Program-made: the position numbers and the translations under genes | In this document: positions 25,500 to 48,233 of the stretch, one piece after another | Layout of the letters: the number at the start of each line of letters is the position of its first letter | Position numbering within the stretch: position 1 is the first letter of the stretch | Virus record (IMG/VR): IMGVR_UViG_3300042879_006196 | Span: 248,001-312,000 of that record | Direction: 5' to 3' (one strand) | DNA: 64,000 bases | The notes under the pieces: generated by a model | Told to the model about the DNA's origin: nothing | Seen by the model: the letters and a program-made list of their open reading frames with translations, nothing else | Database searches by the model: none

Positions 25500-25931
25500 A
25501 TGAAACTGATTTCGCATAGAGGTAACTTAATAGGAGCAAAGACATGTTTGGAAAATCACCCAGATTCCATAAAACATGCATTAGAAAAAGGATTTGATTG
25601 TGAAATAGACGTATGGAAAAAACAAAACAAATTTTACTTAGGTCATGATTTTGCCCAATATCAAATTGATAGAGAATTCTTATTACAAGATAAACTATGG
25701 ATACATTGTAAAAATTTACAAGCATTAGTGGATTTGAAATCTGAAGCGAATGTTTTTTTCCACAATATAGACAGTTATACGCTTACATCTAAAGGCTATG
25801 TGTGGGCGTATCCAGGCTCAGAAGTTATAGAAGATTGTGTAAGAGTGCAGTTTGGTGTAGAAGATATTCCAGAAAATATTTATGGTATATGCTCAGATTG
25901 TGTTGAAGAGTATGCAAAATTAATCAACTAA
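25500..25931 (+). CDS. glycerophosphodiester phosphodiesterase-like (PLC-like) protein
   Basis: ISHRGN, DCEIDVW, LGHD, WIHCKN, GICSD; start reassigned to ATG 6 nt after TATAAT. Confidence 0.75.
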   Translation: MKLISHRGNLIGAKTCLENHPDSIKHALEKGFDCEIDVWKKQNKFYLGHDFAQYQIDREFLLQDKLWIHCKNLQALVDLKSEANVFFHNIDSYTLTSKGYVWAYPGSEVIEDCVRVQFGVEDIPENIYGICSDCVEEYAKLIN

Positions 25932-26243
25932 ATATTTATCGTTTTTAGATGAAGGTATTTTAACAACACAAGTGACACAATCTTCTAATGCTTCAAAATC
26001 AGTGGATTCACCTTTATTTATTTGAATAATGTCATTTGCTTGATAAATTGTGTCGTTCATTCTAGCTGAACCTGAAACAATTACTGTAATTTCATCTGAT
26101 AGCAAATGATAATGCTTATGGTCATAATCACCTTTTGTGTATCTTTTAATGCACACTTCAAAATTTTGTGATTTTTCAATTGAAGGATTGAAGTCACCAA
26201 CAAACCAACCACCAACAAAATCTTGCAAATTGTATTTTATCAT
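25920..26243 (-). CDS. cupin-domain protein
   Basis: GGWFVGDF.P, KHYH...DEIT, CV.VK.PS. Confidence 0.7.
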   Translation of the reverse strand: MIKYNLQDFVGGWFVGDFNPSIEKSQNFEVCIKRYTKGDYDHKHYHLLSDEITVIVSGSARMNDTIYQANDIIQINKGESTDFEALEDCVTCVVKIPSSKNDKYLVD

Positions 26244-27604
26244 TTTTTTGTAGACAAGAAATAATTTAAATCTTCAGGAGTACCAATTCCCCACATTTCA
26301 TCAACATTAAAAATTCCAATCTTTTTATCTTCTGCAATTGCTTCATTAAAAACAGGACAAATGTAAAATTCATTGTTTACTCTAATATCTTTTTCAATCA
26401 TTTTTTCTGCATACTTAACAAAATCAGATCCTTTTAACCACCAATAAATTCCTACTGTTGCAATATTGCTTATTGGTTTCTTTTCAGCCACTTCTGTGAC
26501 AAAACCTTCATTATCTATTTTGACAAAACTCCATTTTGGATGAGTTGCTTCAAAAGTTAAAATTGAGCCATCGAAATTATTATTTATGTTGTTCTTCATG
26601 AACTCAAACGCATCCCATTCAATATATTGGTCAGAATTTGCCATTAGAATAGGATTATCGTTATCAATAAATTCTTTTGCAAGTAACACTGTACATGCCG
26701 ATCCTTCTGTTAAGCCGTCAGTGGTTATTACTTCACATCCAGGAGCAATTTGATTCAAAAATTCTTTTAAAGAGTACTTTGCTATGTGTTCTTTTCTCAC
26801 GATAAAGATATATTTAGCTTCAATATTTAGTGTTTCTAAAACTAATTGTATCATTGGCTTCCCTTTTACTTCAATCAAAGGCTTAGGGAAGGTGTAGCCT
26901 GCCACTTCAAATCTTGATCCAGCTCCAGCCATAGGAATTACTACTGTAAGCTTAGAATTTTTATATTTTTGTTTTAATGATTTTATCACCAAGTTATCTA
27001 AATGATCCTTGATTTTTTCAAGCGTCACTTCTTTTGCATTTACCACTCTTAGCACTTCTGCATTTGTTGAAATGGCAGATTCATATCCAACCTTTGAATC
27101 TTCAATTATCAATGTGTTTGATGGATTACAATTGAGATCAATCATTGTTTTCAAATATATTTCAGCAGAAGGCTTAGGGTTATTTACATTTTCATTTGAT
27201 AAAATTAAATCAAAATATTCCAAAATCTGCATTTTTTCAAGAATGCTTTCAACGGTGCGGTGAATTGCATTTGAGGCACATGCTATTTTGTAACCTTCGT
27301 TTTTTAAAAATCTCAAAAGCTCAATCTTAGTTTCATCCACGCATATTTTTTCTCTGATAAAGTCAAATGTATAATCTTGTTTTTTATTCCAGATATTTTG
27401 TTTTGTCGTAGATTCTAAGTTATCTCTTTCACCAAGAATTTTTAATTTTGTCTTAGTGCTTCTTCCATTGAAGTCCAAATCATGTTCTTTTTTAGTTATT
27501 GAAATATTTGTAAAGTCATAATAAGCTTGTGCAAAAGTTTCAAAATGCATATCAGGCGTATCTACTAAAACACCATCCAAATCAAAAATCACAAGTTTTA
27601 TCAT
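26240..27604 (-). CDS. HAD phosphatase fused to a sugar nucleotidyltransferase
   Basis: N-terminal IFDLDGVLVD, KPSAE, EDS; C-terminal IPMAGAGSRF....PKPLI, NSDQ, EKKPIS, GTPEDL. Confidence 0.85.
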   Translation of the reverse strand: MIKLVIFDLDGVLVDTPDMHFETFAQAYYDFTNISITKKEHDLDFNGRSTKTKLKILGERDNLESTTKQNIWNKKQDYTFDFIREKICVDETKIELLRFLKNEGYKIACASNAIHRTVESILEKMQILEYFDLILSNENVNNPKPSAEIYLKTMIDLNCNPSNTLIIEDSKVGYESAISTNAEVLRVVNAKEVTLEKIKDHLDNLVIKSLKQKYKNSKLTVVIPMAGAGSRFEVAGYTFPKPLIEVKGKPMIQLVLETLNIEAKYIFIVRKEHIAKYSLKEFLNQIAPGCEVITTDGLTEGSACTVLLAKEFIDNDNPILMANSDQYIEWDAFEFMKNNINNNFDGSILTFEATHPKWSFVKIDNEGFVTEVAEKKPISNIATVGIYWWLKGSDFVKYAEKMIEKDIRVNNEFYICPVFNEAIAEDKKIGIFNVDEMWGIGTPEDLNYFLSTKK

Positions 27605-28566
27605 ATTGCATTTACTCTCCATTCAATCATTTCATCAATCATGCTTTCAAAACTGTATTCTGGTTGCCATCCTAATTCAGCTCTGATAGGGAAAGAATCA
27701 CCTTTTAAGACATTTAATTCTTCTGGTCTTAAAAATCTTTCATCTTGAGTAACATAATCTAAATAATTCATGTCTAGTTTGTTAAAAACATATTGTGTTA
27801 AATCTTTAACTGTTCTGCTTTCGCCAGTTGCAACAACGTAATCCTTAGGGGATGTATTCTGCATCATTAAATGCATAGCTTTTATATAATCTTTGGAATG
27901 TCCCCAGTCTCTAGCGGCGTCTAAATTACCTAACTTTAATTCTGATTTGATTCCTTTTTTAATTGTCACAGCCCCTTCCACAACTTTTGCTGTTACAAAA
28001 TTAGTTGCTCTTTGTGGGCTTTCATGATTGAATAAAACGCCTGAAACTATAAACATATCATAAGAATGTTTGTAATTCATTGCCAGATTGTGTGCTACTA
28101 ATTTTGAACAACCATATGGGCTAACTGGGTGCATTGGTGTGGTTATTCTTTGGAATCCATCTTCATCAATTGAATTACCGAACATTTCACTTGATGAAGC
28201 TTGATAAATTTTTATGTCTTTATCTATTACCCTCACTGCTTCTAAAATATTTAAAAAACCTTGAGCATTGACTTGGTTAGTGTATCCAGGCATGTCAAAA
28301 CTAATTCGTACATGCGATTGCGCTGCAAGGTTATAAATTTCATCTGGTCGGATTCTATTTATGAGGTTAAAAATACACATAGGGTCAGTTAAATCACCAT
28401 AATGCAATTTTAATTCTTCAAAATAACTATTCAATCTATAGCTTTGATTTTGTGGCACAGAATGTCTCCTTACAACTCCATGAACATCATATCCAAGGTC
28501 TAAGAGATGTCGCGCTAAATACGAACCATCTTGTCCAGAAATTCCTGTGATTAAAGCTTTTTTCAT
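27601..28566 (-). CDS. gmd: GDP-mannose 4,6-dehydratase
   Basis: ITGISGQDGSYLA, NLAAQSHV, YQASSSEMFG, SPYGCSK, FNHESP, LGNLDA.RDWGH. Confidence 0.96.
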   Translation of the reverse strand: MKKALITGISGQDGSYLARHLLDLGYDVHGVVRRHSVPQNQSYRLNSYFEELKLHYGDLTDPMCIFNLINRIRPDEIYNLAAQSHVRISFDMPGYTNQVNAQGFLNILEAVRVIDKDIKIYQASSSEMFGNSIDEDGFQRITTPMHPVSPYGCSKLVAHNLAMNYKHSYDMFIVSGVLFNHESPQRATNFVTAKVVEGAVTIKKGIKSELKLGNLDAARDWGHSKDYIKAMHLMMQNTSPKDYVVATGESRTVKDLTQYVFNKLDMNYLDYVTQDERFLRPEELNVLKGDSFPIRAELGWQPEYSFESMIDEMIEWRVNAI

Positions 28567-29465
28567 TTTCTTATTTGTTCATAATTTGTAACAAACCATT
28601 CAATTGATTCATTTATTGCATCTTCAAATGGTGTAAAAGTCAAATCTGGGATTAATTCTTTTAACCTTGAAATGTCTGTTGGTTTCCTGAATTGTCCATC
28701 GGGCTTAGATGAATCGTAAACAATGTTACCTTTAAACCCAAAAGCCTTTGCAATTGTATAAGCGCATTCCTCAATAGATATTTCATTTCCGTTAGAAACA
28801 ATTACAGAATCATAATCATGATCAATATTAGTTAGTTGTTTTGTGATTCTTGCTAAATCCTTGGAATAAATAAATTCTCTCAAGGGTTTGCCAGATCCCC
28901 AAATGACAAATTCAGTATTATTCTGTTTAGCCAAAAAACATTTGTGAATCATTCCAGGTAAAACATGAGAATTTTGAAGATTATAATAATCATTTAATCC
29001 AAAAACATTTGTTGGCACAATTGTGAAGTAATTATGTCCTAACTTTTTAGCCTCTATACAAAGATGTTGCATCATTCTTTTAGCATAAGCATAAGAATCA
29101 TTCGTGTAGTGAGGAGGACCCTCAAAAATATACTCTTCCTTTAATGGGTACTCTACTTTGTCTGGAAATACACAAGTAGAAGAAAAATTAATAAGTTTTT
29201 TTACATTTGTCTTAAGAGCAGCCTCAAAAACAATGTTATTCAAGTTACTATTTAACAAATAAAAGTCAATTTTATTGTTGTAATTACTTACAACTCCACC
29301 AACTTTAGCAGCTGTGTGTATTATTGTATCAATTTGATTTTCTGTTAAAAAATTTGAATAATCTTCTAAATTATTAATTCTTTTAGTGTAATCAATAGTT
29401 GAAATTTCTGCTTTGATTGCTGATCCTACCAATCCTTTATGTCCAGTGAGATTTATTTTAGGCAT
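28563..29465 (-). CDS. fcl: GDP-L-fucose synthase-like reductase/epimerase
   Basis: AAKVGG, SSTCVFP, YAYAKR, PTNVFG, SHVLPG, WGSG.PLREF, KPDGQ.RK. Confidence 0.9.
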   Translation of the reverse strand: MPKINLTGHKGLVGSAIKAEISTIDYTKRINNLEDYSNFLTENQIDTIIHTAAKVGGVVSNYNNKIDFYLLNSNLNNIVFEAALKTNVKKLINFSSTCVFPDKVEYPLKEEYIFEGPPHYTNDSYAYAKRMMQHLCIEAKKLGHNYFTIVPTNVFGLNDYYNLQNSHVLPGMIHKCFLAKQNNTEFVIWGSGKPLREFIYSKDLARITKQLTNIDHDYDSVIVSNGNEISIEECAYTIAKAFGFKGNIVYDSSKPDGQFRKPTDISRLKELIPDLTFTPFEDAINESIEWFVTNYEQIRK

Positions 29466-29473: not shown

Positions 29474-30172
29474 TTATACAATTTTTTTAACGTATGCAGT
29501 TGGACAAATGTAGTTTAGAGAAATAATTTCAATATTTTTGTCTTTGAAGAATCTGTCTACCCCTTCAGATTCAGACCATTTAGCGTAGCCATATTCATCA
29601 AAAATAACTAAGCCGCCAACTGAAACTCTATCCCATAGTGCGCACAATGTATCATAAGTTGGCTCACCTAGATCTAAATCTAAATATAAAAGAGAAATTT
29701 TAAAACCTGGGTTTTCCTCTACATATTTTAAAGCAGTTTTAGATATGTCTCCTTGAATTAATTCAAATTCATGTGGCAAAAAGCCATTTGATAAAATATT
29801 TGCCTCTAAATAGTTTTTGTAATTTTGCTCGTGTTTAAAGTTGCGCCCATTGAAAAGCTCGGACATTGCTTCTTTATCTACACTTTTTAAACTATTTATT
29901 AATTCTTCAGAATTGAACATGTCAAAACCAATAACTTTTTTACTGGTGTTCGGACATAAATATCTTTTTAATTTCAGAAAACTATATATACCAGATCCTT
30001 TGAAAACACCACATTCTACAATATCACCTGGGATATTTTTAACACTTTCGAACAATAAAGTACGTGCTAAAAGTTTACCAAATACTTTGACATCATCACT
30101 CATTATAAAGCTATTAAATCCATCATAAAGTGATTGTTCTGAAACAATAATTTCTATATTTTCTCTTTTCAT
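29474..30172 (-). CDS. TylF/MycF-family sugar O-methyltransferase
   Basis: GDIVECGVFKG, GFDMF, LLYLD.D..EPT, G.VIFDEY. Confidence 0.8.
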   Translation of the reverse strand: MKRENIEIIVSEQSLYDGFNSFIMSDDVKVFGKLLARTLLFESVKNIPGDIVECGVFKGSGIYSFLKLKRYLCPNTSKKVIGFDMFNSEELINSLKSVDKEAMSELFNGRNFKHEQNYKNYLEANILSNGFLPHEFELIQGDISKTALKYVEENPGFKISLLYLDLDLGEPTYDTLCALWDRVSVGGLVIFDEYGYAKWSESEGVDRFFKDKNIEIISLNYICPTAYVKKIV

Positions 30173-30173
30173 C

Positions 30174-30962
30174 TTATCCTTGATCCCTATCGGTGTGAAA
30201 ATACATTAAAGGTTTATTATTTGCAAAACACGATAAATTTCTTGCGCCAAATCTGATCCAATCAATGGAAATGTTTTTAAATATATTTCTTTCACTTTCT
30301 TTCATGTCTTCAGGGTATTCAAGCCTATATTGAATATCGCTTATTTTATACAAATTTTTAGAAATTAACCATGCTTGATAGCTTAATTGGTCGAACACCT
30401 CCCAATCACACTTAAAGAAAAAACCTTCATCATATTTTATGTCTTTAAAATATGATCCCAAATGCTGATCTACAAACCAAGGTATTGTATTCCAAACAGA
30501 ATACATTTTTTTGAATTTTTTCAGCTCTTCATTTTCTTTAAAAAACTTTGAACTTTGGTGTTGAATATTTATCAAGAAATCCACATCTGTAGGATAGCAA
30601 TATAAAACTTTGTCATTATAGAATCTCATGAATGATTCCTCAAACCCCGTATTTATAAATAAACTTTCAGAATCTACACACGCATATCCATAGTATTTTT
30701 GCATTTTATAAACTTCATGTAACCCATACATTTTTTTATATGTTACAGGGCTTCTGCTTGAATTTACATTTGGGCAAATTATAATTTGATGTGGGTTTAC
30801 TATTTCCTGGTAAAAATTTAATTTATTTTGCTCTTCTTCACTTACAACTATATATAAATCAATATCTGGCTTAATCAAATTGTAGCTCTCACATAGTTTT
30901 TTTAACCATTCAATTTTTGGAAAATGTATTGGAACAATAATTGCAAGGTTATTTCCATTCAT
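30174..30962 (-). CDS. hypothetical, possible GT-A glycosyltransferase
   Basis: AIIVPIH, ACVDSE; start reassigned to ATG 30962. Confidence 0.45.
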   Translation of the reverse strand: MNGNNLAIIVPIHFPKIEWLKKLCESYNLIKPDIDLYIVVSEEEQNKLNFYQEIVNPHQIIICPNVNSSRSPVTYKKMYGLHEVYKMQKYYGYACVDSESLFINTGFEESFMRFYNDKVLYCYPTDVDFLINIQHQSSKFFKENEELKKFKKMYSVWNTIPWFVDQHLGSYFKDIKYDEGFFFKCDWEVFDQLSYQAWLISKNLYKISDIQYRLEYPEDMKESERNIFKNISIDWIRFGARNLSCFANNKPLMYFHTDRDQG

Positions 30963-30968
30963 TTCTAA

Positions 30969-30978
30969 ATTGTACAAT
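30969..30978. promoter_or_regulatory. palindromic bidirectional -10 element ATTGTACAAT
   Basis: TACAAT is 6 nt from ATG 30985 (+) and 6 nt from ATG 30962 (-). Confidence 0.7.
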
Positions 30979-30984: not shown

Positions 30985-31671
30985 ATGGAATTTACTTTTG
31001 GGATTTGTGCCTCTCGCTCAAATAAAGACTTACATCAAACTTTAGCCAGAAGCATTCATCTTTTAAATATACCTAATTATGAAATACTTTTTATCGGTGA
31101 CATAGAAGATGTAGACAGTAAATCAAAAGTAATTTATTTTGATGAAACACAAAAAGAAGGATGGATTACAAAGAAAAAAAATATACTATGCCAAAATGCA
31201 AATTTTGAAAATATTGTGCTTTTACACGATTATATAGAATTTGAAGCAAATTGGTATAAAGGTTTTTTAAATTTTGGCAATGATTTTGATATTGCAATGA
31301 ATGTAATTTTGAATAGTAACAATACTAGATTCAGAGATTGGTGTCTGAATCCATTTGATATTATACCTCCTAAAGGACCTGTTGTAACAAGAGAATTCTT
31401 TTTACCATACAATATCACGCATTTAACAAATTTGATGTATATATCTGGAACTTACTGGGTTGCTAAGACTAAATTTATGTTGGATAATCCTTTGGATGAA
31501 AATTTGATATGGGGACAAAGTGAAGATTTAAAATGGTCTGAGCAGGTAAGATCAAAAACACAATTTAAAATGAACACTAATTCAATAGTCAGATGTATGA
31601 AGTTAAAATATTGTGATTTTACTGAAATATCTCCTGAAAATCTTATGAAGATAGAAGCTCTTTCATCTTAG
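30985..31671 (+). CDS. GT2-like glycosyltransferase
   Basis: FTFGIC, GWITKKKN, VLLHDY, WGQSED.KWS; paralog of 43846-44556. Confidence 0.7.
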   Translation: MEFTFGICASRSNKDLHQTLARSIHLLNIPNYEILFIGDIEDVDSKSKVIYFDETQKEGWITKKKNILCQNANFENIVLLHDYIEFEANWYKGFLNFGNDFDIAMNVILNSNNTRFRDWCLNPFDIIPPKGPVVTREFFLPYNITHLTNLMYISGTYWVAKTKFMLDNPLDENLIWGQSEDLKWSEQVRSKTQFKMNTNSIVRCMKLKYCDFTEISPENLMKIEALSS

Positions 31672-33626: not shown

Positions 33627-33632
33627 TTTATA

Positions 33633-33642
33633 ATTGTACAAT
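33633..33642. promoter_or_regulatory. palindromic bidirectional -10 element ATTGTACAAT
   Basis: 6 nt to ATG 33649 (+) and 6 nt to GTG 33626 (-). Confidence 0.7.
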
Positions 33643-33648
33643 TTGATT

Positions 33649-39234: not shown

Positions 39235-39274
39235 TCATGCATATTATACATAAACTTCGATGTACAATAAAATA

Positions 39275-41787: not shown

Positions 41788-41793
41788 ATAATT

Positions 41794-41803
41794 GTTGTAC
41801 AAC
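41794..41803. promoter_or_regulatory. palindromic bidirectional element GTTGTACAAC
   Basis: TACAAC is 6 nt from ATG 41810 (+) and 6 nt from ATG 41787 (-). Confidence 0.7.
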
Positions 41804-42352: not shown

Positions 42353-43217
42353 TCTTGCCGAATAATTCAACAAGATAATCTATATCAAAATATTTATTAT
42401 ATGTGACATAAGGTTGCATCAAATAATAAATATATAGGTCTTTGTCGTTGTTAATTTCAATTACTTTATCTGCAAGTTCATCAAAATCTTTGAATGCTTT
42501 AACGTTAAGAAAACTTTCGCTATTAAAGTCATCATTAATCAAATCACTGCCCCAATAAATAGGAATACAATTTGCTATCATTGGTTCAAAAATCTTTTCT
42601 GTAGTGTACCCTTTGTAGCCATTGAATTCATCATTGTTTTCAATAGCAAAGCAAAACTTGTATTGTCTAAGAAAATCAATTTTAGCTTGTGATCCTGTAA
42701 TGGCACCAGGCTCTCCTGGTATGACTGGGTGGTTGTTCATGTGTCTACCTGCACAGTCAACATGCATCCTGGTCAAAAAATGATTAACAATTGCTTCTCT
42801 GGGACATTTGCCACCCGCACCTTGTGAAATGTATGTAATCAGTTTAGATTTTTCATTTAAAATTTCTTTTGTGTAATCTCTTGTTAAAATTGATTTATAA
42901 GATTTTGTTATTCCGAATTTCCATAAATCATAGGCATATAGCGGATACAAAGGTAGCCTTAAATGTGTCTCACTGTCCACATAAAATGAAGTAAGTGCAT
43001 AATCACATGCGCCTGAGTTGAAAAAAGGCTCTCCGCTAAAATAGACAGCCTTAGCATTGCCATTTTTTTGGAAATTAGGTGAATCAGTGAAAATAATATC
43101 AGGATTTTCACTTGTCACTTCTACGTCATGTGTTTGGCTTAAAACCCAAACAAAAAAGTTATCCTTCTTATCGAAGGTGCCCCAGAAACTATCGAACCAT
43201 ACTTTTAATTTTTTCAT
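42345..43217 (-). CDS. GT10 alpha-1,3-fucosyltransferase-like
   Basis: FSGEP, YKF.FAIEN, YTTEKI..PM.A.CIPIYWG, FNS.SFLN. Confidence 0.85.
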   Translation of the reverse strand: MKKLKVWFDSFWGTFDKKDNFFVWVLSQTHDVEVTSENPDIIFTDSPNFQKNGNAKAVYFSGEPFFNSGACDYALTSFYVDSETHLRLPLYPLYAYDLWKFGITKSYKSILTRDYTKEILNEKSKLITYISQGAGGKCPREAIVNHFLTRMHVDCAGRHMNNHPVIPGEPGAITGSQAKIDFLRQYKFCFAIENNDEFNGYKGYTTEKIFEPMIANCIPIYWGSDLINDDFNSESFLNVKAFKDFDELADKVIEINNDKDLYIYYLMQPYVTYNKYFDIDYLVELFGKII

Positions 43218-43219: not shown

Positions 43220-43849
43220 TTAATAAAACCCATTAACTATAATTGAAGGTGAGTCATCACAAGAACACACTGGAGGATAAACAGCATAAATCTTTTTATC
43301 ACTCCTCATGATTACACCATCCGCTGTATTCATTTTTTTAACTTGCGATTCATAAAGATCACAAGCTATATTAGACGTTCTGATAACATAAGCTGAAGTT
43401 CCAGCTCTTGTATATTTATCAGTGTACGGACTTGCTAAATGCGGAGTAGTGTACAAATCACAATCAGCTGTGAACAATGCCAAAATATCATAATCAGAAT
43501 TTAAAGCAATTTCTAAATTTGATAATGTATTAAAAACAGAGTCGTCCTCTAAAATCAAACAATTACTTAAATTTTCATTAGCAATTATTTGATAAATCAA
43601 CATGTGTGCCAAAGCACAAGCAACTTGACCATCACTTAATGGATCAAGCAAAGGAATATCATTAGGTATACTTGGTAGATTATGTACGGCTAAGCCATCT
43701 TTAGAAACACAATTCAAACCTTGCATTACAAATTGACACAATCTATAATTTAAACCTTCCCATCTTTCATTAAATGCTTGAAATCTTTGAGACTCAGGGT
43801 GAGCAATTACAAATACGTTTTCAAAATAATTATTGATTATATGATTCAT
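43220..43849 (-). CDS. GT25-like glycosyltransferase
   Basis: GQVACALAH, LILEDD, GT.AYVI. Confidence 0.7.
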   Translation of the reverse strand: MNHIINNYFENVFVIAHPESQRFQAFNERWEGLNYRLCQFVMQGLNCVSKDGLAVHNLPSIPNDIPLLDPLSDGQVACALAHMLIYQIIANENLSNCLILEDDSVFNTLSNLEIALNSDYDILALFTADCDLYTTPHLASPYTDKYTRAGTSAYVIRTSNIACDLYESQVKKMNTADGVIMRSDKKIYAVYPPVCSCDDSPSIIVNGFY

Positions 43850-44556
43850 TGTTCACCGAAGTAATTATTATAAAAGTTTTTTACCAAATTTAACGATTCT
43901 TTGCTCATTTCATTTAAAACATATTCTTTTTGTTTAAGAAATTTAACAGCAGAATGGGAATTCATAGTAAATTTATATTTACTCCTCACTCTTTTTGACC
44001 ATTCAACATCTTCTGCCTCACCCCATATCAAATTTTCATTAAGCGGAAATTCTTGCATTACATTTTTTTTTGCCACCCAATAAAACCCAGGAATGTACAT
44101 AATTTTTGAAAACTCTTGATCATAAGGTAAGAGTTGTTCGGCATTTGGCAACTGATAATCTTGATAATAAACCAACCAATCTATATTTCTTTTTCCATCG
44201 AGATTGTGTACACGGTTCATGCACACTTGAAAGTCATTACCAAACTTTAAAAATCCTTCATACCAGCCATTTTCTAAAACAATATAATCATGCATTAAAA
44301 CTATATTTTCATATTTTGCGTTTTCTACAATCAAATTTTTTTTCTTTGTGATCCATCCAGTTTTTTGTGTTTCGTCAAAATGAATATAATCATCATAGAG
44401 GTTTTCACATAACCAATCTTTGTTCAAATTATCATAGATATCTCCAATGAATATTATTTGTTTATTTGGTATTTTCTGATTTTTAATTTGATTATAAATA
44501 ATTGGATGTAAGTGTTTATTTTCTTTAGTCACACAAATTCCAAAAGTAAAATCCAT
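43846..44556 (-). CDS. GT2-like glycosyltransferase (paralog of 30985-31671)
   Basis: FTFGIC, FDETQK.GWITKKKN, VLMHDY, WGEAEDVEWS. Confidence 0.7.
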   Translation of the reverse strand: MDFTFGICVTKENKHLHPIIYNQIKNQKIPNKQIIFIGDIYDNLNKDWLCENLYDDYIHFDETQKTGWITKKKNLIVENAKYENIVLMHDYIVLENGWYEGFLKFGNDFQVCMNRVHNLDGKRNIDWLVYYQDYQLPNAEQLLPYDQEFSKIMYIPGFYWVAKKNVMQEFPLNENLIWGEAEDVEWSKRVRSKYKFTMNSHSAVKFLKQKEYVLNEMSKESLNLVKNFYNNYFGEQ

Positions 44557-44576: not shown

Positions 44577-45206
44577 ATGATGAGCGAATTCTACAGTCAA
44601 TACGGTCAAGACCAATATATTTACGAAACTTTCTTCAAAAACAAAACGGACGGAGTATTTGTAGATATAGGAGCTTATGATGGAATAAAACTTTCTAATA
44701 GTTACTTTTTTGAAAAACTAGGTTGGACAGGTTTTTGTTTTGAGCCAGTAGATGACGCTTTTCAAAAATTAATATCGAATAGATCTCACTCTAAATGCTT
44801 TAACTGTGCAATTGGACATGAAAATAAAAAAGTACAATTCTTGAAAGTAGTTGGAAACGCAGATATGCTCAGTGGCGTATTAGATTATTATGATGCAAAT
44901 CATATGTTTAGAATAAACAAAGAAACTTATGAATCAAATGGAGAACAAATTGGAATTGAAGTTGAAATGTTCACGCTTGATCATTTCCTTCCTATAAATT
45001 CTCCAATTGATTATTTGTCAATTGATACTGAAGGTGGTGAATCTAAAATATTAAAAAATATTTTAGAAAATTTCAATCCAAAAATCATTTCTGTAGAAGT
45101 GAATTATGAAGCAGATTCAAAGAAACTTTTTGAAGTTCTTGACAAACAATATGAGGTAGTTAAAAATTTAGGATGCGATCTTATTTTAAAGGATAAAAAA
45201 TGGTAG
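44577..45206 (+). CDS. FkbM-family methyltransferase
   Basis: FYSQYGQD, FVDIGAYDG...SN, FEP, LSIDTEG.E. Confidence 0.9.
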   Translation: MMSEFYSQYGQDQYIYETFFKNKTDGVFVDIGAYDGIKLSNSYFFEKLGWTGFCFEPVDDAFQKLISNRSHSKCFNCAIGHENKKVQFLKVVGNADMLSGVLDYYDANHMFRINKETYESNGEQIGIEVEMFTLDHFLPINSPIDYLSIDTEGGESKILKNILENFNPKIISVEVNYEADSKKLFEVLDKQYEVVKNLGCDLILKDKKW

Positions 45207-46006
45207 TTACATATATAGAAGGCGGATTAGGCAACATGTTATTTCAACTTTGCTTCAGCTATGCTAAGGCAAAAGAAAATAACACGACATTTCATACATT
45301 GAATTATAGAGAAAATCTTGATATTATCAAGGATAAACATAAAGCTGATATTGAATCTTATGAAAAAACGATTCTCAGAAATTTCAGTATTTCTCCTCCT
45401 CCACTGCTGTATCAAGCACAAATTCAACATTTTTGCCCTTTTAATTTTGAAGAAATTCCTTATGAGCCAGATTGTTACAATTTGTATAAAGGGTATTTTC
45501 AATCAGAAAAGTATTTTGAAAAAAGCCAAGAAGATTTAGCACAAATTTTTCAACCAACCGAAGAAATCATTGACCACATGAAAGAAAAATACCCTTTTCT
45601 TTTTACTTTAGATTGTGTGGCTTTGCACATTAGACGAGGAGATTATTTGCAATTACCAAATCATCATCCAATTGTTCCCACCGATCATTATCATAAAGCA
45701 TTAAAGAAACTTGGTGATTTTGAAAAAATCTTAGTGTTTACAAATGATATGGATTGGTGCTACAAGAATTTTGTAGAATCGCGAGCTATTTTCATTGAAG
45801 AGTCAGATTGGATGAGTTTATATCTTATGAGCTTTTGCACTAAGCATGTTATTGCTAATTCATCTTTTTCTTGGTGGGGTGCAAAATTAGCTGAGATGTT
45901 TTTCCCAGAAAAAAACATCGAAGTAGTTGCTCCTCCAGTGTGGTTTGGACCTGCTGTTGATGGCGATGAAAAAGATTTAGTTCCATCAAGATGGATGAAA
46001 GTGTAA
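45200..46006 (+). CDS. GT11 alpha-1,2-fucosyltransferase-like
   Basis: GGLGNMLFQ, GYFQSEKYF, HIRRGDY, IANSSFSWWGA, P..WF. Confidence 0.9.
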   Translation: MVVTYIEGGLGNMLFQLCFSYAKAKENNTTFHTLNYRENLDIIKDKHKADIESYEKTILRNFSISPPPLLYQAQIQHFCPFNFEEIPYEPDCYNLYKGYFQSEKYFEKSQEDLAQIFQPTEEIIDHMKEKYPFLFTLDCVALHIRRGDYLQLPNHHPIVPTDHYHKALKKLGDFEKILVFTNDMDWCYKNFVESRAIFIEESDWMSLYLMSFCTKHVIANSSFSWWGAKLAEMFFPEKNIEVVAPPVWFGPAVDGDEKDLVPSRWMKV

Positions 46007-46650
46007 TGACTAAATTAGATTTGTTTAATAACACACATGTAATATCTTTAGCACATAGATTGGATAGAAGAAGTGTCATAGCTAAGCAATTTGAGTTATA
46101 TCAAATTCCTTATTCTTTTTTTGATGCTATCAATGGACATGAATTAGATTATAATGGTCCGTTGTTAAAAGGCGAGGAGGGTGTAAGATTATCACATATT
46201 GAGTTATTAAACAAATCAATCAAAAACAATGAAAAATCACTTTTTATTTTTGAAGATGATGTTGAGTTTTCAGAAAGCTTTAACGAAGATTTACACAGAG
46301 CTTTAAATGTAGTTCCTGATAATTTTGATATGTTATATTTGGGGGCTTCACATCATCTAAAGCCAGAATTAGTAAAAGATAACTTATATAAAATTTCACA
46401 TTCTTACACCGCACATGCACTTTGTATAAAAAACAACCTTTTTGCACCACTCAGAGACACAATCTCAAACAATAAAAATTTACCAGTGGATGTAATTTAT
46501 GCATTAGTTCAACCGCAAGTAAATGCATTTGCTATTTATCCACATCTTGCATGGCAATTCAACAGTTATTCAGACATACAAAACAAATTTGTTGATTATG
46601 AATTCCTTAAAAAAGAATTTGTTAGATTTGAAAATCAAACTATTCTTTGA
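46006..46650 (+). CDS. GT25-family glycosyltransferase
   Basis: ISL.HR.DRR, FFDA..G, G...SH, IFEDD, MLYLG, Q....SDI. Confidence 0.85.
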   Translation: MTKLDLFNNTHVISLAHRLDRRSVIAKQFELYQIPYSFFDAINGHELDYNGPLLKGEEGVRLSHIELLNKSIKNNEKSLFIFEDDVEFSESFNEDLHRALNVVPDNFDMLYLGASHHLKPELVKDNLYKISHSYTAHALCIKNNLFAPLRDTISNNKNLPVDVIYALVQPQVNAFAIYPHLAWQFNSYSDIQNKFVDYEFLKKEFVRFENQTIL

Positions 46651-47270
46651 GCTTCCCAATTATGTTCTCTTGGCGCTAAATTCACAATATATGTTGGAGA
46701 GTTCTGCATGAATTGGTATTGACACCCAGCATTTACGGCGTTCACAATAAATTCCCAATCATGACCATAATTTCTTGTGTGAGCTGGTAATTTTTTAACC
46801 ATATCATTACTCACACATAATTCTGAATGCCCTATTTTGCTTGGGGCAAGCTCTGGAACTCTTAACTCAAGAATTCCATTACCTCTATCTATACTCGTGT
46901 TAAAAAGCCCAAAATCTTTTCCGCTTTTAGCAGACATCTCATAGTAAAGCTCAAAATGATTGTTGAAAATATTATCATCATTACTCAGAAACATAAAAAA
47001 ATCACCAGTGCAATTTTTCATAGCGTAGTTAATTGCTTGACAAGAAGTGCCATCATGTGTGTCAAAGTTTTTAACAATCATTCTATCACCAATAATTTTT
47101 TTAAAAAACGCAAAATCTTCACTTGCCACAATTTTATCAAAAACAGGGCATTTATCTCCTAAGAAAAAAAATTCATAGTCGTCTAAAGTTTGCAAACTTA
47201 TAGAATTCAATAATCTAAGAGTAAGCATTTCTCTACCCCAACTTGGAAGAACTACACTTAATTTTGCCAT
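46635..47270 (-). CDS. GT2-family glycosyltransferase
   Basis: LSVVLPSW, GD.C, FLSNDD, DW.F. Confidence 0.75.
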   Translation of the reverse strand: MAKLSVVLPSWGREMLTLRLLNSISLQTLDDYEFFFLGDKCPVFDKIVASEDFAFFKKIIGDRMIVKNFDTHDGTSCQAINYAMKNCTGDFFMFLSNDDNIFNNHFELYYEMSAKSGKDFGLFNTSIDRGNGILELRVPELAPSKIGHSELCVSNDMVKKLPAHTRNYGHDWEFIVNAVNAGCQYQFMQNSPTYIVNLAPREHNWEAQRIV

Positions 47271-47276
47271 TAAATT

Positions 47277-47291
47277 ATTATACTGTAAAAT
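47277..47291. promoter_or_regulatory. back-to-back -10 elements
   Basis: TATAAT(-) 6 nt before ATG 47270; TAAAAT(+) 6 nt before ATG 47298. Confidence 0.6.
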
Positions 47292-47297
47292 ACATTC

Positions 47298-48233
47298 ATG
47301 ATAAAACGAGAGTTCAAAAAAATTTTAGTTACAGGAGGGGCAGGATTTATTGGAAGTTATTTTGTTGATTTGTGCTTAGAAAAAAATATTTTTGTAATTA
47401 ATTATGACGCATTAAAAACAGGAAGCATGCTTGAACATGGACCTCTTAAAAAACATCAAAATTATCATTTCATGCCATTTGATGTTTCAAACCCACAATT
47501 AATTATTCCAGAAGACATTGAGGCAATTGTTCATTTTGCGGCTGAAACACATGTAGATAGAAGTGTAACAAACCCATTTTCATTTGTTCAATCAAATGTT
47601 GTGGGGACATATAATCTTTTGGAAAAATGCAAAGACAAAAACATTTGGTTTCATTTAGTTTCTACTGATGAAGTGTATGGAGATATATGGGGAACAAAAA
47701 GGTCTACAGAAACTGATCCTATTAATTGCTCTTCTCCTTATTCTGCTACTAAGTCGGCCTCTGAGCAATTAGTTATTGCATATGGGCGCACCTATGGCTT
47801 AAAGTACACAATCACAAGAGGTTGCAACACTGTGGGTGGAAGACAGAACAACGAGAAATTAATTCCTAAATTTGTGTACAATGCTAAAAACAATTTACCT
47901 TTGCCAGTTTATGGCAACGGAGAAGCAATTAGGCAGTACATTCATGTCACTGATCATGCAGAAGCAATTTACGCTGTTCTTACTAAAGGAATGCTTAATA
48001 ACATTTTTAATGTGGGCACAGATGCTAAGTTTTCAATTAATGAAATTGTTAATATCATAAAAGAATTTTATCCTAATTTAACTATCACAGATAAAGAAAA
48101 CAGACCTGGGCATGATCTGCGATATTGTATGAATTGTGGGCTCATTCAAGCCTGGGTAACATGGCAACCAAAAATAAAAGGCAAAGATATTATTCTTAAA
48201 TCTATTTCAGAATTGTGTAATTCTTACGTATAA
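47298..48233 (+). CDS. rmlB: dTDP-glucose 4,6-dehydratase
   Basis: VTGGAGFIGS, HFAAETHVDRS, VSTDEVYG, SPYSATK, EKLIP, RPGHD.RY. Confidence 0.93.
   Translation: MIKREFKKILVTGGAGFIGSYFVDLCLEKNIFVINYDALKTGSMLEHGPLKKHQNYHFMPFDVSNPQLIIPEDIEAIVHFAAETHVDRSVTNPFSFVQSNVVGTYNLLEKCKDKNIWFHLVSTDEVYGDIWGTKRSTETDPINCSSPYSATKSASEQLVIAYGRTYGLKYTITRGCNTVGGRQNNEKLIPKFVYNAKNNLPLPVYGNGEAIRQYIHVTDHAEAIYAVLTKGMLNNIFNVGTDAKFSINEIVNIIKEFYPNLTITDKENRPGHDLRYCMNCGLIQAWVTWQPKIKGKDIILKSISELCNSYV

What the first reader, a model, noticed from the sequence alone, without database searches (positions are those of the whole stretch)
25500..48233. About 23-kb, 28-gene glycan factory for fucose, 6-deoxy/dideoxy and methylated sugars
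Seen: Gmd+Fcl, RmlB, an RmlD-like gene, a distant RmlC (61125), an RfbH-like dehydratase, two GT10-like, one GT11, two GT25-like and several GT2-like enzymes, plus two TylF-like, one FkbM and one C-methyltransferase. No flippase, polymerase, ligase or undecaprenyl-phosphate initiating transferase is recognisable, and the proteins look soluble. Established: LPS-like gene islands occur in large cyanophages, and giant viruses glycosylate their own particles. Inference: the absence of membrane assembly genes favours cytoplasmic glycosylation of virion proteins or DNA over rebuilding the host O-antigen.
Basis: partly seen in the sequence, partly recalled or inferred. Interest (0 to 1): 0.7.

Follow-up and report, generated by a model that had tools for sequence, protein, structure and literature searches.

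The report
Conserved sugar-coat gene module in lake jumbo phage
A 347-kb uncultured lake phage carries an intact, conserved 23-kb block of 28 soluble enzymes that make fucose-type, deoxy and methylated sugars and string them into a glycan; similar blocks are known in large cyanophages, and what they decorate (the phage particle or the host surface) is still unknown.

Summary
Window 25479-48233 contains exactly 28 tightly packed ORFs. They include Gmd and Fcl, an RmlB-like dehydratase, a short RmlD-like reductase, an E1/RfbH-type 3-dehydratase and 11 glycosyltransferases (2 GT10, 1 GT11, 2 GT25, 6 GT-A/GT2-like). There are also 5 methyltransferases. SAH hydrolase lies next door; RmlC and an RmlA-like gene lie elsewhere.

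No island protein has a transmembrane segment. The whole 347-kb phage genome lacks Wzx, Wzy/WaaL, WbaP, WecA and GtrA homologues and has no protein with more than four membrane spans.

The module is under purifying selection and is collinear in uncultured relatives, where it diverges at the same rate as the phage backbone.

DNA glycosylation is disfavoured: the genome has no ThyA-like hydroxymethylase, TET/JBP or C5-methylase.

The missing membrane genes do not separate virion glycosylation from remodelling of host lipid-linked glycans, because cytoplasmic transferases could use host carriers and host export. I lean towards virion glycosylation (about 0.42) because the module co-inherits with the phage backbone, but this is unproven. 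I class it as a new variant of the known phage glycan ("LPS") islands.

The parts
25479..25931 (+). g1, 150 aa, unknown function; travels with the module
   Evidence: phrog_34507 at 2e-24. Homologues lie inside or next to the island in L006, L009, L010 and L015.
25920..26243 (-). g2, 107 aa, unknown function; travels with the module
   Evidence: phrog_24762 at 6e-39. Homologues occur in the L010 island and in L015.
26240..27622 (-). g3, fusion of a beta-phosphoglucomutase-like HAD domain and a sugar-1-phosphate nucleotidyltransferase
   Evidence: HAD_2 104.7 bits and NTP_transferase 49.1 bits. TIGR02009 and rmlA_long hits. Conserved at 53-75% identity in all relatives.
27601..28566 (-). g4, GDP-mannose 4,6-dehydratase (Gmd)
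   Evidence: PF16363 361 bits. TIGR01472 373.6 bits. GxxGxxG and YxxxK motifs present.
28563..29465 (-). g5, GDP-L-fucose synthase (Fcl)-like
   Evidence: NF047922 223.9 bits over the full length. Epimerase 126.9 bits.
29474..30172 (-). g6, TylF-like sugar O-methyltransferase
   Evidence: PF05711 48.5 bits.
30174..30977 (-). g7, 267 aa, conserved, no family assigned
   Evidence: No Pfam, PHROG or PDB hit. 64-78% identical in L003, L005 and L015.
30985..31671 (+). g8, GT-A-fold glycosyltransferase of a large unannotated aquatic-virus family
   Evidence: 471 homologues. AF2 pLDDT 96.8. Foldseek hits are GT-A enzymes. Invariant H81-D82-Y83 and E180-D181.
31643..32341 (-). g9, short (232 aa) RmlD-like SDR, probable 4-ketoreductase paired with g10
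   Evidence: RmlD_sub_bind 60.3 bits. Syntenic with g10 in LR756502.1, L003 and L009.
32331..33659 (-). g10, E1/RfbH-type NDP-4-keto-6-deoxyhexose 3-dehydratase
   Evidence: NF011936 360.8 bits. 251 bits to PDB 3bcx; keeps the active-site His (YPAHH) and the Cys cluster.
33634..34314 (+). g11, 226 aa, unknown; relatives carry DUF8361; a real gene
   Evidence: Relatives are annotated PF27674. 6 of 6 population variants are synonymous.
34297..35109 (-). g12, GT10 fucosyltransferase-like
   Evidence: PF00852 43.1 bits. Motif ENVSNNSYFTEK.
35075..35998 (-). g13, GT-A/GT2-like glycosyltransferase of a viral family
   Evidence: Atlas structure TM 0.71-0.82 to viral and GT2 clusters.
35998..36813 (-). 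g14, GT-A glycosyltransferase (GT14 Branch / GT2-like) of a viral family
   Evidence: Atlas TM 0.70-0.82.
36798..37688 (-). g15, class-II-aldolase / GatZ-KbaZ-like TIM-barrel enzyme
   Evidence: Atlas TM 0.94 to a viral family and 0.68-0.78 to F_bP_aldolase clusters. Invariant D61-H62, H84, H186 and H262. Always adjacent to g16.
37696..39234 (-). g16, fusion of a LicC/MurU-type nucleotidyltransferase (aa 1-225) and an APH/choline-kinase-fold kinase (aa ~235-512)
   Evidence: AF2 pLDDT 92.5. LicC Z 23.2 and LicA Z 14.7. Further structure and profile hits. Invariant HGD..N and DWR kinase motifs.
39260..39949 (+). g17, tentative GT2-like transferase
   Evidence: PF00535 20.0 bits, under the cut-off. 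Conserved in relatives.
39832..41085 (+). g18, SAM methyltransferase with sugar C-methyltransferase-like architecture; start codon uncertain
   Evidence: Methyltransf_23 42 bits and Methyltransf_14 19.9 bits. PDB 4rv9 (mycarose 3-C-MT) at E 0.0034. Replaced in L003.
41086..41802 (-). g19, fusion of an HAD phosphatase-like domain and a type II mannose-6-phosphate-isomerase cupin
   Evidence: MannoseP_isomer 88.1 bits plus HAD hits. TIGR01479 C-terminus.
41810..42352 (+). g20, TylF-like methyltransferase
   Evidence: PF05711 47.3 bits.
42345..43217 (-). g21, GT10 alpha-1,3-fucosyltransferase-like with a FucT_N domain
   Evidence: PF00852 59.8 bits and PF18025 39 bits. YTTEK motif.
43220..43849 (-). 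g22, GT25
   Evidence: PF01755 45.8 bits.
43846..44556 (-). g23, GT-A glycosyltransferase, paralogue of g8
   Evidence: 47.8% identity to g8. Included in alignment A1.
44577..45206 (+). g24, FkbM methyltransferase
   Evidence: PF05050 67.9 bits.
45200..46006 (+). g25, GT11 alpha-1,2-fucosyltransferase-like
   Evidence: PF01531 68.6 bits. Motif HIRRGDY.
45991..46650 (+). g26, GT25
   Evidence: PF01755 67.9 bits.
46635..47270 (-). g27, GT2
   Evidence: PF00535 25.8 bits.
47298..48233 (+). g28, NDP-glucose 4,6-dehydratase (RmlB-like)
   Evidence: TIGR01181 307 bits. PF16363 198.6 bits.
48950..50182 (+). S-adenosylhomocysteine hydrolase; probable support for the five methyltransferases
   Evidence: AdoHcyase_NAD 208.6 bits and AdoHcyase 189.9 bits.
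61125..61661 (-). RmlC (dTDP-4-dehydrorhamnose 3,5-epimerase), detached from the island
   Evidence: TIGR01221 184.5 bits against a cut-off of 155.75. PF00908 187 bits.

Best explanation
The block is a self-contained cytoplasmic glycan-assembly module of an uncultured, probably lytic, 347-kb freshwater jumbo phage.

What homology and motifs show:
1. It makes its own sugar nucleotides. An HAD-isomerase and an HAD-nucleotidyltransferase feed Gmd and Fcl to give GDP-L-fucose. An RmlB-like dehydratase, together with RmlA-like and RmlC genes elsewhere in the genome and a short reductase, gives a 6-deoxyhexose. An E1-type 3-dehydratase gives a 3,6-dideoxyhexose.
2. Eleven soluble Leloir transferases assemble an oligosaccharide.
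3. Five SAM methyltransferases cap it, with SAH hydrolase next door to remove the by-product.

What is inferred:
- A conserved cassette (HAD phosphatase, cupin isomerase, kinase + nucleotidyltransferase, class-II-aldolase-like enzyme) makes one further, unidentified activated sugar without a phosphomutase.
- The acceptor is most likely the phage's own virion proteins, such as the Ser/Thr-rich fibre or decoration proteins. That would give the particle a fucose-rich, methylated coat, as in chloroviruses, mimiviruses and some mycobacteriophages.

The stated confidence applies to the acceptor claim. Confidence that the block is a working cytoplasmic glycan factory is about 0.85.
For: Enzymology:
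- Family and motif evidence for every step.
- Structure-based assignment of g8/g23, g13, g14, g15 and g16.

The genes are intact and under selection:
- 36 of 40 natural variants are synonymous.

The module behaves like a phage core, not a recent host-derived insertion:
- Same locus and same order in a 239.5-kb relative. Island genes are 51-91% identical (mean about 73%), against 52-92% (mean about 72%) for 16 backbone genes.
- Same locus downstream of GroEL and ClpS in a 262-kb relative, with island genes at 50-79% and backbone genes at 45-67% identity.
- A core set is kept at 40-66% identity in two more distant contigs where GroEL is only 38% identical.
- Island GC (28-32%) is not above the genome's 33.6%.

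Other points in favour:
- No integrase.
- No lipid-carrier or export genes anywhere in the genome.
- Transferase families g8, g13 and g14 are almost exclusively viral and include Nucleocytoviricota clusters.
- Giant virion-like ORFs have 20-25% Ser+Thr against 14% genome-wide. One has a ~120-aa Ser/Thr/Pro tract.
- Precedents: virion glycosylation by virus-encoded enzymes in giant viruses (PMC9614988, PMC10117803) and in mycobacteriophages (Freeman 2023, as cited in PMC12619734).
Against: - There is no direct evidence of any glycan on any protein.
- No recognisable protein-initiating transferase was found. GT41 is absent. The O-FucT search found nothing, but its control was silent.
- In bacteria, GT10, GT11 and GT25 enzymes work on LPS/LOS intermediates.
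- Most relatives were found by searching with island genes, so 'always present' is partly ascertainment. Only one informative relative was found with a non-island gene.
- Ser/Thr-rich tail fibres are common without glycosylation.
- The E1 dehydratase lacks its E3 reductase in the phage, so at least one step depends on the host.
Confidence: 0.42

Rival explanations
1. Host-envelope remodelling. The soluble phage transferases extend or cap host lipid-linked intermediates (Und-PP-linked O-units, lipid A-core, capsule or S-layer/pilin glycan precursors) at the cytoplasmic face. Host machinery then exports them. The changed cell surface blocks superinfection, or stops progeny from being lost on debris. 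This is the standard hypothesis for cyanophage 'LPS' islands.
For: - The gene families are those of bacterial O-antigen and LOS loci: GT10, GT11, GT25, GT2, Gmd/Fcl, RfbH and Rml.
- Analogous islands in P-SSM2, S-SCSM1, S-SCSM2R and RN05-S are interpreted this way (PMC1079782, PMC9602691, PMC12801897).
- Absence of phage membrane genes is fully compatible, because host Wzx/Wzy/WaaL/MsbA could be used.
- The E1 step already needs a host reductase.
- Two phage pilin-like proteins sit beside the stray Rml genes.
Against: - The same eleven-transferase set is kept collinear over deep divergence and across lakes. Host surface glycans, by contrast, are typically hypervariable.
- There is no integrase or other sign of lysogeny.
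- No initiating phosphoglycosyl transferase, Gtr or acetyltransferase-type seroconversion genes were found.
- Several of the transferases belong to virus-restricted families.
Confidence: 0.35
2. DNA hypermodification. The glycan is built on a modified base of the phage genome to evade restriction, as with glucosyl-hmC in T4 or the oligosaccharide-like thymidine modification of YerA41.
For: - Phage transferases can place multi-sugar glycans on DNA (Pyle 2024, as cited in PMC12619734; YerA41, PMC9023294).
- A T4 gp1-like dNMP kinase lies at 54497-55171.
Against: - No ThyA-family dCMP/dUMP hydroxymethylase, no TET/JBP dioxygenase and no C5 DNA methyltransferase exist anywhere in the genome, with positive or partly positive controls.
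- Eleven transferases plus five sugar methyltransferases far exceed any known DNA glycan.
- The genome assembles at full identity from at least 18 Illumina lake metagenomes. This is only weak evidence.
Confidence: 0.04
3. A non-virion, non-envelope product. The module would make a soluble or secreted methylated oligosaccharide or glycolipid, or glycosylate host cytoplasmic proteins, to rewire host metabolism or to act as a decoy.
For: - All enzymes are soluble and no acceptor is identifiable.
- The conserved cassette of g15, g16 and g19 makes an unknown activated compound.
Against: - There is no precedent in phages.
- The large number of linkage-specific transferases points to a defined, templated glycan on a defined acceptor.
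Confidence: 0.1

Closest known systems
'LPS' / cell-wall synthesis and modification gene islands of large T4-like cyanomyoviruses (P-SSM2 with 24 genes; S-SCSM1; S-SCSM2R with 22 genes and 13 glycosyltransferases; RN05-S / S-B05 with an ~18-kb cluster)
   Same: - A lytic tailed phage carries a 15-25-kb cluster of NDP-sugar dehydratases and epimerases, a DegT-family enzyme, MPI, FkbM and other methyltransferases, and GT2/GT10/GT11/GT25 transferases, with no export genes.
- The target is unknown in both cases.
- There is direct homology for some genes: g10 is 56% identical, g28 36% and g25 32% (PMC1079782, PMC12801897, PMC9602691).
   Different: - The phage lineage differs: psbA is absent, there is no megablast match to any deposited phage, and GroEL is present.
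- The sample source is a freshwater lake.
- Here the module sits at a fixed locus and co-diverges with the backbone. In P-SSM2 against P-SSM4 the clusters are present or absent.
- This module has the g15-g16-g19 cassette and the g8/g23 transferase family, which have no homologue in any cultured phage.
Autonomous virion glycosylation of giant viruses (chlorovirus PBCV-1 capsid glycans; Mimivirus/Megavirinae fibril glycan gene clusters)
   Same: - Virus-encoded Gmd and GDP-fucose synthase or rhamnose pathways, soluble virus-encoded transferases and sugar methyltransferases.
- Clade-conserved clusters with clade-specific additions.
- Transferase families g13, g14 and g8 have Nucleocytoviricota members or fold matches (PMC9614988, PMC10117803, PMC4691112).
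   Different: - Those are eukaryotic viruses whose virion glycans have been demonstrated chemically.
- Here the virus is a tailed phage and no glycan has been observed.
- The sequence relationship is at family or fold level only.
Mycobacteriophage virion O-glycosylation (Che8, Corndog and similar phages; Freeman et al. 2023)
   Same: - Phage-encoded GT-A transferases act in the cytoplasm on phage structural proteins.
- The Che8 glycosyltransferase is among the fold matches of g8.
   Different: - Those phages carry one to four transferases, have no sugar-nucleotide pathway, and use host sugars.
- The host is Gram-positive-like.
- The resemblance is generic GT-A fold (TM about 0.54), not orthology.
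Bacterial O-antigen / LOS loci containing fucose and 3,6-dideoxyhexoses (for example the Yersinia/Salmonella rfb ddh genes and the Helicobacter Lewis-antigen FucTs)
   Same: The same enzyme families and motifs are present: an E1 with the active-site His and the Fe-S cysteines, the GT10 YxTEK motif, the GT11 HxRRxD motif, and Gmd/Fcl.
   Different: There is no Wzx, Wzy, WaaL, Wzm-type polytopic protein, phosphoglycosyl transferase or E3 reductase anywhere in the genome.
LicC-LicA (CDP-choline) and MurU-AmgK (UDP-MurNAc salvage) enzyme pairs, as models for g16
   Same: - The N-terminal domain is structurally closest to LicC, MurU and PntC (Z 20-23).
- The C-terminal domain is closest to the choline kinase LicA and to fructosamine-3-kinase (Z about 14.7).
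- The kinase catalytic motifs are invariant.
   Different: - In g16 the two activities are fused in one 512-aa protein.
- No LicD transferase is present in the genome.
- g16 is always linked to an aldolase-like enzyme, an HAD domain and a cupin isomerase, which points to a sugar rather than choline.
- The substrate is unknown.

Membership tests
Phage glycan ('LPS'/CWSM) island as in large cyanomyoviruses | A contiguous cluster in a tailed-phage genome that combines NDP-sugar modifying enzymes with several glycosyltransferase families | tested here: met
   28 ORFs; 11 GTs in at least 4 families; 5 MTs; at least 8 sugar-nucleotide enzymes. The phage context is shown by GroEL, virion proteins, a lysin, 23 tRNAs and an IMG/VR record that CheckV rates 99% complete.
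Phage glycan ('LPS'/CWSM) island as in large cyanomyoviruses | Carried by a T4-like cyanophage (psbA, gp23-type capsid) | tested here: not met
   PF00124 is absent and its control was positive. PF07068 is absent, but its control was silent, so that result is uninformative. No nucleotide match to any deposited phage.
Wzx/Wzy-dependent O-antigen or capsule locus | Flippase (Wzx), polymerase (Wzy) or ligase (WaaL), and an initiating phosphoglycosyl transferase (WbaP/WecA) | tested here: not met
   PF01943, PF04932, PF02397 and PF00953 are all negative in the 347-kb genome, while the controls hit 10-13 of 14 genomes. No ORF has more than 4 TM segments.
Gtr-type seroconversion module of temperate phages | GtrA flippase, GtrB and a polytopic GtrC, plus an integrase | tested here: not met
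   PF04138 is negative. No polytopic protein is present. PF00589 is negative.
Phage DNA glycosylation systems | A route to a hydroxymethyl-pyrimidine handle, by a ThyA-family hydroxymethylase or by TET/JBP acting on 5mC or T | tested here: not met
   PF00303, PF12851 and PF00145 are all negative in the genome.
Phage DNA glycosylation systems | A DNA-specific glycosyltransferase (T4 alpha/beta-GT type or 5hmC GT families) | not tested
   No search with those families was run. None of the 11 GTs hit them in Pfam.
Virus-autonomous virion glycosylation (giant-virus type) | Virus-encoded sugar-nucleotide pathways plus soluble virus-encoded transferases and methyltransferases | tested here: met
Virus-autonomous virion glycosylation (giant-virus type) | The glycan is demonstrated on virion proteins | not testable with these tools
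   This needs particles. Only candidate acceptors were seen: the Ser/Thr-rich giant ORFs and the mucin-like tract at C1:196685-200530.
GDP-L-fucose de novo pathway (Gmd + Fcl) | Both enzymes are present with SDR catalytic motifs | tested here: met
   Best NCBIfam hits are gmd (373.6 bits) and Fcl (223.9 bits). Both are under the strict equivalog cut-offs of 415 and 500 but match over the full length. GxxGxxG and YxxxK motifs are present.
E1 (RfbH/DdhC/AscC) 3-dehydratase of 3,6-dideoxyhexose synthesis | Active-site His in place of the aminotransferase Lys, and a Cys cluster for [2Fe-2S] | tested here: met
   In the alignment to 3bcx, the query reads 'YPAHH' against 'YPAHH' in E1 (the 3bb8 variant chain reads 'YPAKH'). 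The cysteines 'DCYC...ACGTC' align with 'DCYC..GC..TC'.
E1 (RfbH/DdhC/AscC) 3-dehydratase of 3,6-dideoxyhexose synthesis | A partner E3 reductase (FNR-like, RfbI/AscD) | tested here: not met
   PF00175 is negative in the genome. A host reductase or another partner would be needed.
dTDP-L-rhamnose pathway (RmlABCD) | All four enzymes are present | tested here: inconclusive
   RmlA-like at C1:150977-151843 (PF00483 235.8 bits). RmlB-like g28 (307 bits). RmlC is above its cut-off. The RmlD candidate g9 is short (232 aa) and scores only 59 bits against a cut-off of 224.
GT10 fucosyltransferases | The alpha-1,3-FucT motif (..EN..Y.TEK) | tested here: met
   g12 has ENVSNNSYFTEK. g21 has AIEN...YTTEK plus a FucT_N domain.
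GT11 alpha-1,2-fucosyltransferases | Motif I, HxRRxD | tested here: met
   g25 has HIRRGDY at residue 143. PF01531 68.6 bits.
LicC/LicA phosphocholine activation (considered for g16) | A LicD phosphocholine transferase to use the CDP-choline | tested here: not met
   PF04991 is negative in the genome. This lowers the reading 'g16 makes CDP-choline', but not the reading 'g16 works like LicC+LicA'.

The most novel reading that the evidence does not exclude
A clade of uncultured aquatic jumbo phages builds, with its own roughly 28-gene inherited module, a complex fucose/deoxyhexose-rich, methylated glycan on its own virion. That would be a tailed-phage counterpart of chlorovirus and mimivirus glycosylation. 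The module would include a previously undescribed four-enzyme route (aldolase-like enzyme, cupin isomerase, HAD phosphatase, fused anomeric kinase-nucleotidyltransferase) to an unidentified activated sugar. That route is shared from lake phages to Pacific marine phages.
Probability: 0.35. Interest if true: 0.8.

Novelty: new variant of a known kind. Interest (0 to 1): 0.6.

Why it matters
Large phages in oceans and lakes repeatedly carry 'LPS-like' islands whose purpose has been guessed at since 2005 and never tested.

This example shows three things. Such a module can be a vertically inherited, selected core of a phage lineage rather than a recent insertion. It can be self-sufficient from fructose-6-phosphate to methylated glycan. 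It can lack every membrane step.

That sharpens the question into a testable one: does the glycan end up on the virion or on the host envelope? The phage recurs in at least 18 lake metagenomes, so lectin capture or glycoproteomics of lake viral fractions could answer it without a cultured host.

The module also points to sizeable unannotated enzyme families. These are the g8/g23 transferases (more than 470 homologues) and the g15-g16 cassette (more than 270 homologues), which are candidates for new sugar-nucleotide chemistry.

Tried and rejected
Steps that led nowhere:
- Megablast of the island and of the structural region against 50,697 phage records found no match.
- Single-protein scans of IMG/VR with g15 and GroEL, and an alignment-based scan with a backbone gene, found nothing.
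- phmmer against the PDB for g7, g8, g11, g13, g14 and g15 found nothing significant.
- Relaxed Pfam scans of the unknowns and their relatives found nothing, so g7 and g11 stay unassigned.
- Two runs labelled RNA-Seq that hold about 22% of the island's words proved to be probably DNA. There is therefore no expression evidence.
- Complex prediction for g16 + g15 returned 'no answer' and is not used as evidence.
- The promoter and terminator scan showed no enrichment over shuffles, so expression timing could not be inferred.
- Searching the relatives' whole contigs for the Ser/Thr-rich protein was not possible, because those records are not held.

Readings rejected:
- Cyanophage identity: no psbA.
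- Lysogenic seroconversion: no integrase and no Gtr.
- Phosphocholine decoration through g16: no LicD.
- Collagen-type acceptors for the GT25 enzymes: no Gly-X-Y repeats in this genome, although one relative has a collagen-repeat gene beside its GT25.
- ColD-type chemistry for g10: it is the longer E1 type with the Cys cluster.

Full report
WHAT THE WINDOW IS. The window is bases 248001-312000 of a single 347,392-bp contig with 33.6% GC. It is an IMG/VR virus record that CheckV rates 99% complete. The genome encodes a GroEL, virion and tail-fibre-like proteins up to 4138 aa long, a GH108 lysin, ClpS, a T4 gp1-like dNMP kinase and 23 tRNAs. It has no nucleotide match in 50,697 deposited phage genomes. 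It has no psbA and no tyrosine integrase. At least 18 lake-water metagenome runs from 2020-2024 hold 98-100% of the sampled words of a 6-kb stretch of the island. This is therefore a recurrent, uncultured, probably lytic freshwater jumbo phage whose host is unknown.

CHECK OF THE OBSERVATION. Exactly 28 ORFs fill 25479-48233, with gaps of 0-25 bp or overlaps and 12 strand switches.
- Gmd (g4), Fcl (g5) and an RmlB-like dehydratase (g28).
- A short RmlD-like SDR (g9) and an RfbH-like enzyme (g10).
- Two GT10 (g12, g21), one GT11 (g25) and two GT25 (g22, g26).
- GT2 (g27, and weakly g17).
- Two TylF (g6, g20), FkbM (g24), and a methyltransferase with a weak C-methyltransferase C-terminal domain (g18). 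g18 also hits mycarose 3-C-methyltransferase 4rv9 at E 0.0034.
- The distant RmlC at 61125-61661 scores above the equivalog cut-off.

Diagnostic motifs are intact. The GT10 YxTEK motif is present in both copies, the GT11 HIRRGDY motif is exact, and the four SDRs keep GxxGxxG and YxxxK.

g10 aligns end to end with the Yersinia E1 dehydratase (3bcx, 251 bits). It keeps the histidine that replaces the aminotransferase lysine, and it keeps the cysteine cluster. It is therefore the Fe-S E1 type and not ColD. No FNR-like E3 partner exists in the genome.

- g13 and g14 are GT-A transferases. They belong to families that are almost entirely viral, including Nucleocytoviricota clusters (Atlas structure TM 0.7-0.8).
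- g8 and g23 are paralogues, 47.8% identical, of a family with 471 homologues in aquatic metagenomes.
  - The AF2 model (pLDDT 96.8) matches GT-A enzymes in the PDB and in BFVD.
  - This brings the count to eleven transferases.
- g3 fuses a beta-phosphoglucomutase-like HAD domain to a sugar-1-phosphate nucleotidyltransferase.
- g19 fuses an HAD domain to a type II mannose-6-phosphate-isomerase cupin.
- g16 (512 aa; model pLDDT 92.5) is a two-domain fusion.
  - Its N-terminal domain is closest to LicC, MurU and PntC (Z 20-23).
  - Its C-terminal domain is closest to the choline kinase LicA and to fructosamine-3-kinase (Z about 14.7).
  - The kinase motifs HGD..N and DWR are invariant.
- g15 is a class-II-aldolase / GatZ-like TIM barrel (Atlas TM 0.94 to a viral family of more than 200 members; 0.68-0.78 to aldolases). 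It has invariant D61-H62, H84, H186 and H262.
- g7 and g11 (whose relatives carry DUF8361), and g1 and g2, remain unassigned. All four travel with the module.
- Outside the stated coordinates, SAH hydrolase lies directly downstream at 48950-50182. An RmlA-like gene lies 97 kb upstream.

MEMBRANE MACHINERY. None of the 28 proteins has a hydrophobic 19-residue window typical of a TM helix. The single window over threshold is the Rossmann strand of g28. Among 444 non-overlapping ORFs of the whole genome, none has more than four predicted TM segments, and the largest such proteins are 133-158 aa. HMM searches of the six-frame genome were all negative for:
- Wzx (PF01943)
- Wzy_C/WaaL (PF04932)
- Bac_transf (PF02397)
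- the WecA/MraY family (PF00953)
- GtrA (PF04138)
The same searches hit 10-13 of 14 control genomes.

THE MODULE IS SELECTED AND INHERITED WITH THE PHAGE.
- Population variation. A 90-99% identical variant in other aquatic metagenomes differs from the window at 40 listed sites in g10-g15. Of these, 36 are synonymous, including 6 of 6 in the unannotated g11.
- The 239.5-kb relative. Homologues of g15, g16 and g8 led to large uncultured contigs. This relative is Ga0304730_1000015, and the same phage also appears as Ga0114969_10000023.
  - It has g1-g28 in the same order and orientation.
  - Its island genes are 51-91% identical (mean about 73%). Sixteen backbone genes upstream are 52-92% identical (mean about 72%).
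  - It was also recovered independently with a non-island gene.
- The 262-kb relative. It has the module at the same place downstream of GroEL and ClpS but lacks g4-g7. Its island genes are 50-79% identical and its backbone genes 45-67%.
- More distant contigs. Two keep a core at 40-66% identity (g3, g8/g23, g12, g14, g15, g16, g17, g19, g21, g22, g25), although GroEL is only 38% identical.
- Overall pattern. There is a conserved core with an accessory layer that comes and goes (Gmd/Fcl, E1 + reductase, RmlB). Island GC (28-32%) is at or below the genome mean.
- Caveat. Most relatives were found with island genes, so the universality of the module in the clade is not established.

A CONSERVED CASSETTE. 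Three far more distant contexts have g16 only 30-34% identical. They are a 253-kb ENA contig, a 74-kb JGI contig and the Pacific single-virus genome MH319741.1. In all three the genes HAD, MPI-cupin, g16 and g15-like lie directly adjacent in that order, inside otherwise different transferase and methyltransferase islands. No cultured phage has a homologue of g8. Cultured phages offer only a partial nucleotidyltransferase hit to g16.

I infer that these four domains plus the aldolase-like enzyme form one pathway. A ketose phosphate would be made or epimerised by g15, isomerised by the cupin, dephosphorylated by the HAD domain, re-phosphorylated at the anomeric carbon by the kinase, and activated by the nucleotidyltransferase. 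That is a mutase-free route to an unidentified NDP-sugar. The alternative, CDP-choline synthesis of the LicA/LicC type, is weakened by the absence of LicD in the genome. The pathway is inference only. A complex prediction for g15 and g16 gave no answer.

WHAT IS THE ACCEPTOR?
- DNA is unlikely. The genome has no ThyA-family hydroxymethylase, no TET/JBP and no C5 DNA methylase. No known handle for a DNA glycan can therefore be made, and the enzyme set is far larger than any known DNA glycosylation system.
- The absence of membrane genes does not decide between virion proteins and host lipid-linked glycans.
  - Bacterial GT10, GT11, GT25 and GT2 enzymes are themselves soluble or peripheral, and a phage can borrow the host's initiating transferase and exporters.
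  - No known protein-initiating transferase was found. GT41 is negative. The O-FucT search is negative but its control was silent. GT1/GT4 enzymes are absent.
- Evidence leaning towards a phage-encoded acceptor:
  - The fixed locus and backbone-like divergence of a large, linkage-specific transferase set across phages that very probably infect different strains or species.
  - The lack of any lysogeny gene.
  - The virus-restricted transferase families shared with giant viruses, where virion glycosylation is proven (PMC9614988, PMC10117803).
  - The autonomy of precursor supply, including SAH hydrolase.
  - Giant virion-like proteins with 20-25% Ser+Thr, one with a ~120-residue mucin-like Ser/Thr/Pro tract.
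- Evidence leaning the other way:
  - The bacterial roles of these enzyme families.
  - The standing interpretation of cyanophage islands as host-surface modifiers (PMC1079782, PMC9602691, PMC12801897).
  - The dependence of the E1 step on a host reductase.
- My estimates are virion glycosylation 0.42, host-envelope remodelling 0.35, another product 0.10 and DNA 0.04.

COMPARISON WITH WHAT IS KNOWN. The closest known systems are the 'LPS' or cell-wall synthesis and modification islands of large cyanomyoviruses:
- P-SSM2 has 24 such genes (PMC1079782).
- S-SCSM2R has 22, with 13 transferases in at least seven families including GT10, GT11, GT25, GT2 and GT1 (PMC12801897).
- Synechococcus phage RN05-S has an ~18-kb cluster with MPI, Gmd, RmlC, SDRs, FkbM, DegT, GT2, GT11, GT17, GT25 and an O-fucosyltransferase.

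This island is the same kind of thing. It shares a few orthologues with them (g10 is 56% identical). It differs in phage lineage, habitat, apparent vertical inheritance, the E1-type dideoxy branch, and the g15-g16-g19 cassette and g8/g23 family, which are absent from cultured phages.

It is not a member of the Wzx/Wzy, Gtr or DNA-glycosylation systems, because defining features of each were tested and not met. Functionally it most resembles giant-virus glycosylation clusters, but the defining feature of those, a glycan on the particle, cannot be tested here.

VERDICT.
- Novelty: a new variant of a known kind.
- Interest is moderate to high (0.6). The module makes a twenty-year-old open question directly testable in an abundant, recurrent lake phage, and it exposes unannotated enzyme families.

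Noticed in passing
window 48950-50182 (+): An S-adenosylhomocysteine hydrolase lies directly downstream of the island. It is a plausible support gene for the five methyltransferases. The finding's coordinates do not include it.
   Followed up: partly
window 59603-60634 (+), and genome C1:147447-148430 (L007 448-1431, -): There are two phage-encoded type-IV-pilin-like proteins with the N-terminal methylation motif. Each lies one or two genes from a stray rhamnose-pathway gene: RmlC at 61125-61661, and the RmlA-like gene at C1:150977-151843. Pilins are common O-glycosylation targets in bacteria.
   Followed up: no
genome C1:196685-200530 (L008 2686-6531), outside the window: A 1281-aa virion-like protein with a weak Gly_rich_2 hit has a ~120-residue tract of almost pure Ser/Thr/Pro/Gly (aa ~1013-1130), resembling mucin-type O-glycosylation linkers. 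The neighbouring giant ORFs have 20-25% Ser+Thr, against 14% genome-wide.
   Followed up: partly
window 25479-48233: There are twelve strand switches among 28 genes, with intergenic gaps of 0-25 bp (7 bp at the divergent pair g7/g8). The arrangement is kept in the 239.5-kb relative. The distant L010, L011 and L018 islands are co-directional instead. Sigma-70-like promoters and terminators are not enriched, so the way the module is transcribed is unexplained.
   Followed up: partly
L010 7602-10521; L011 7311-11033; L018 8317-11483; window 36798-39234 and 41086-41802: The cassette HAD, MPI-cupin, nucleotidyltransferase-kinase (g16) and aldolase-like enzyme (g15) is adjacent in the same order in distant freshwater contigs and in a Pacific marine single-virus genome. 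It appears to be a widespread, undescribed sugar-activation unit of aquatic phages.
   Followed up: partly
L006 16001-17569: In one distant relative a 522-aa collagen-repeat protein follows the GT11-GT25 pair. GT25 includes collagen galactosyltransferases. The window's genome has no Gly-X-Y repeat protein.
   Followed up: partly
whole contig (C1:1-347392): IMG/VR classes the record as a 'provirus'. However, it has no tyrosine integrase, begins at an ATG and ends at a TGA. This looks like trimming at gene borders by CheckV, possibly triggered by bacterial-like genes, rather than a real prophage.
   Followed up: partly
window 18230-19849 (+), 24499-24798 (-), 20929-21300 (+): A phage GroEL (phrog_5725, 479 bits), a ClpS adaptor, and a small ORF whose homologue in a relative is annotated AdoMet decarboxylase sit just upstream of the island. 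The same neighbourhood is found in the relatives.
   Followed up: partly
window 1160-9538 (+): A 2792-aa ORF with 25% Ser+Thr has no Pfam family. It lies next to tail-fibre / virion-structural-like ORFs at 9569-16826.
   Followed up: no
window 33634-34314 (+): g11 starts at a TTG, overlaps the end of g10 and has no family. It is nevertheless a real gene: all six population variants in it are synonymous, and its relatives carry DUF8361. Its weak resemblance to IscU/NifU (E about 0.3) is not significant, but it is noteworthy next to an Fe-S enzyme that lacks its reductase.
   Followed up: partly
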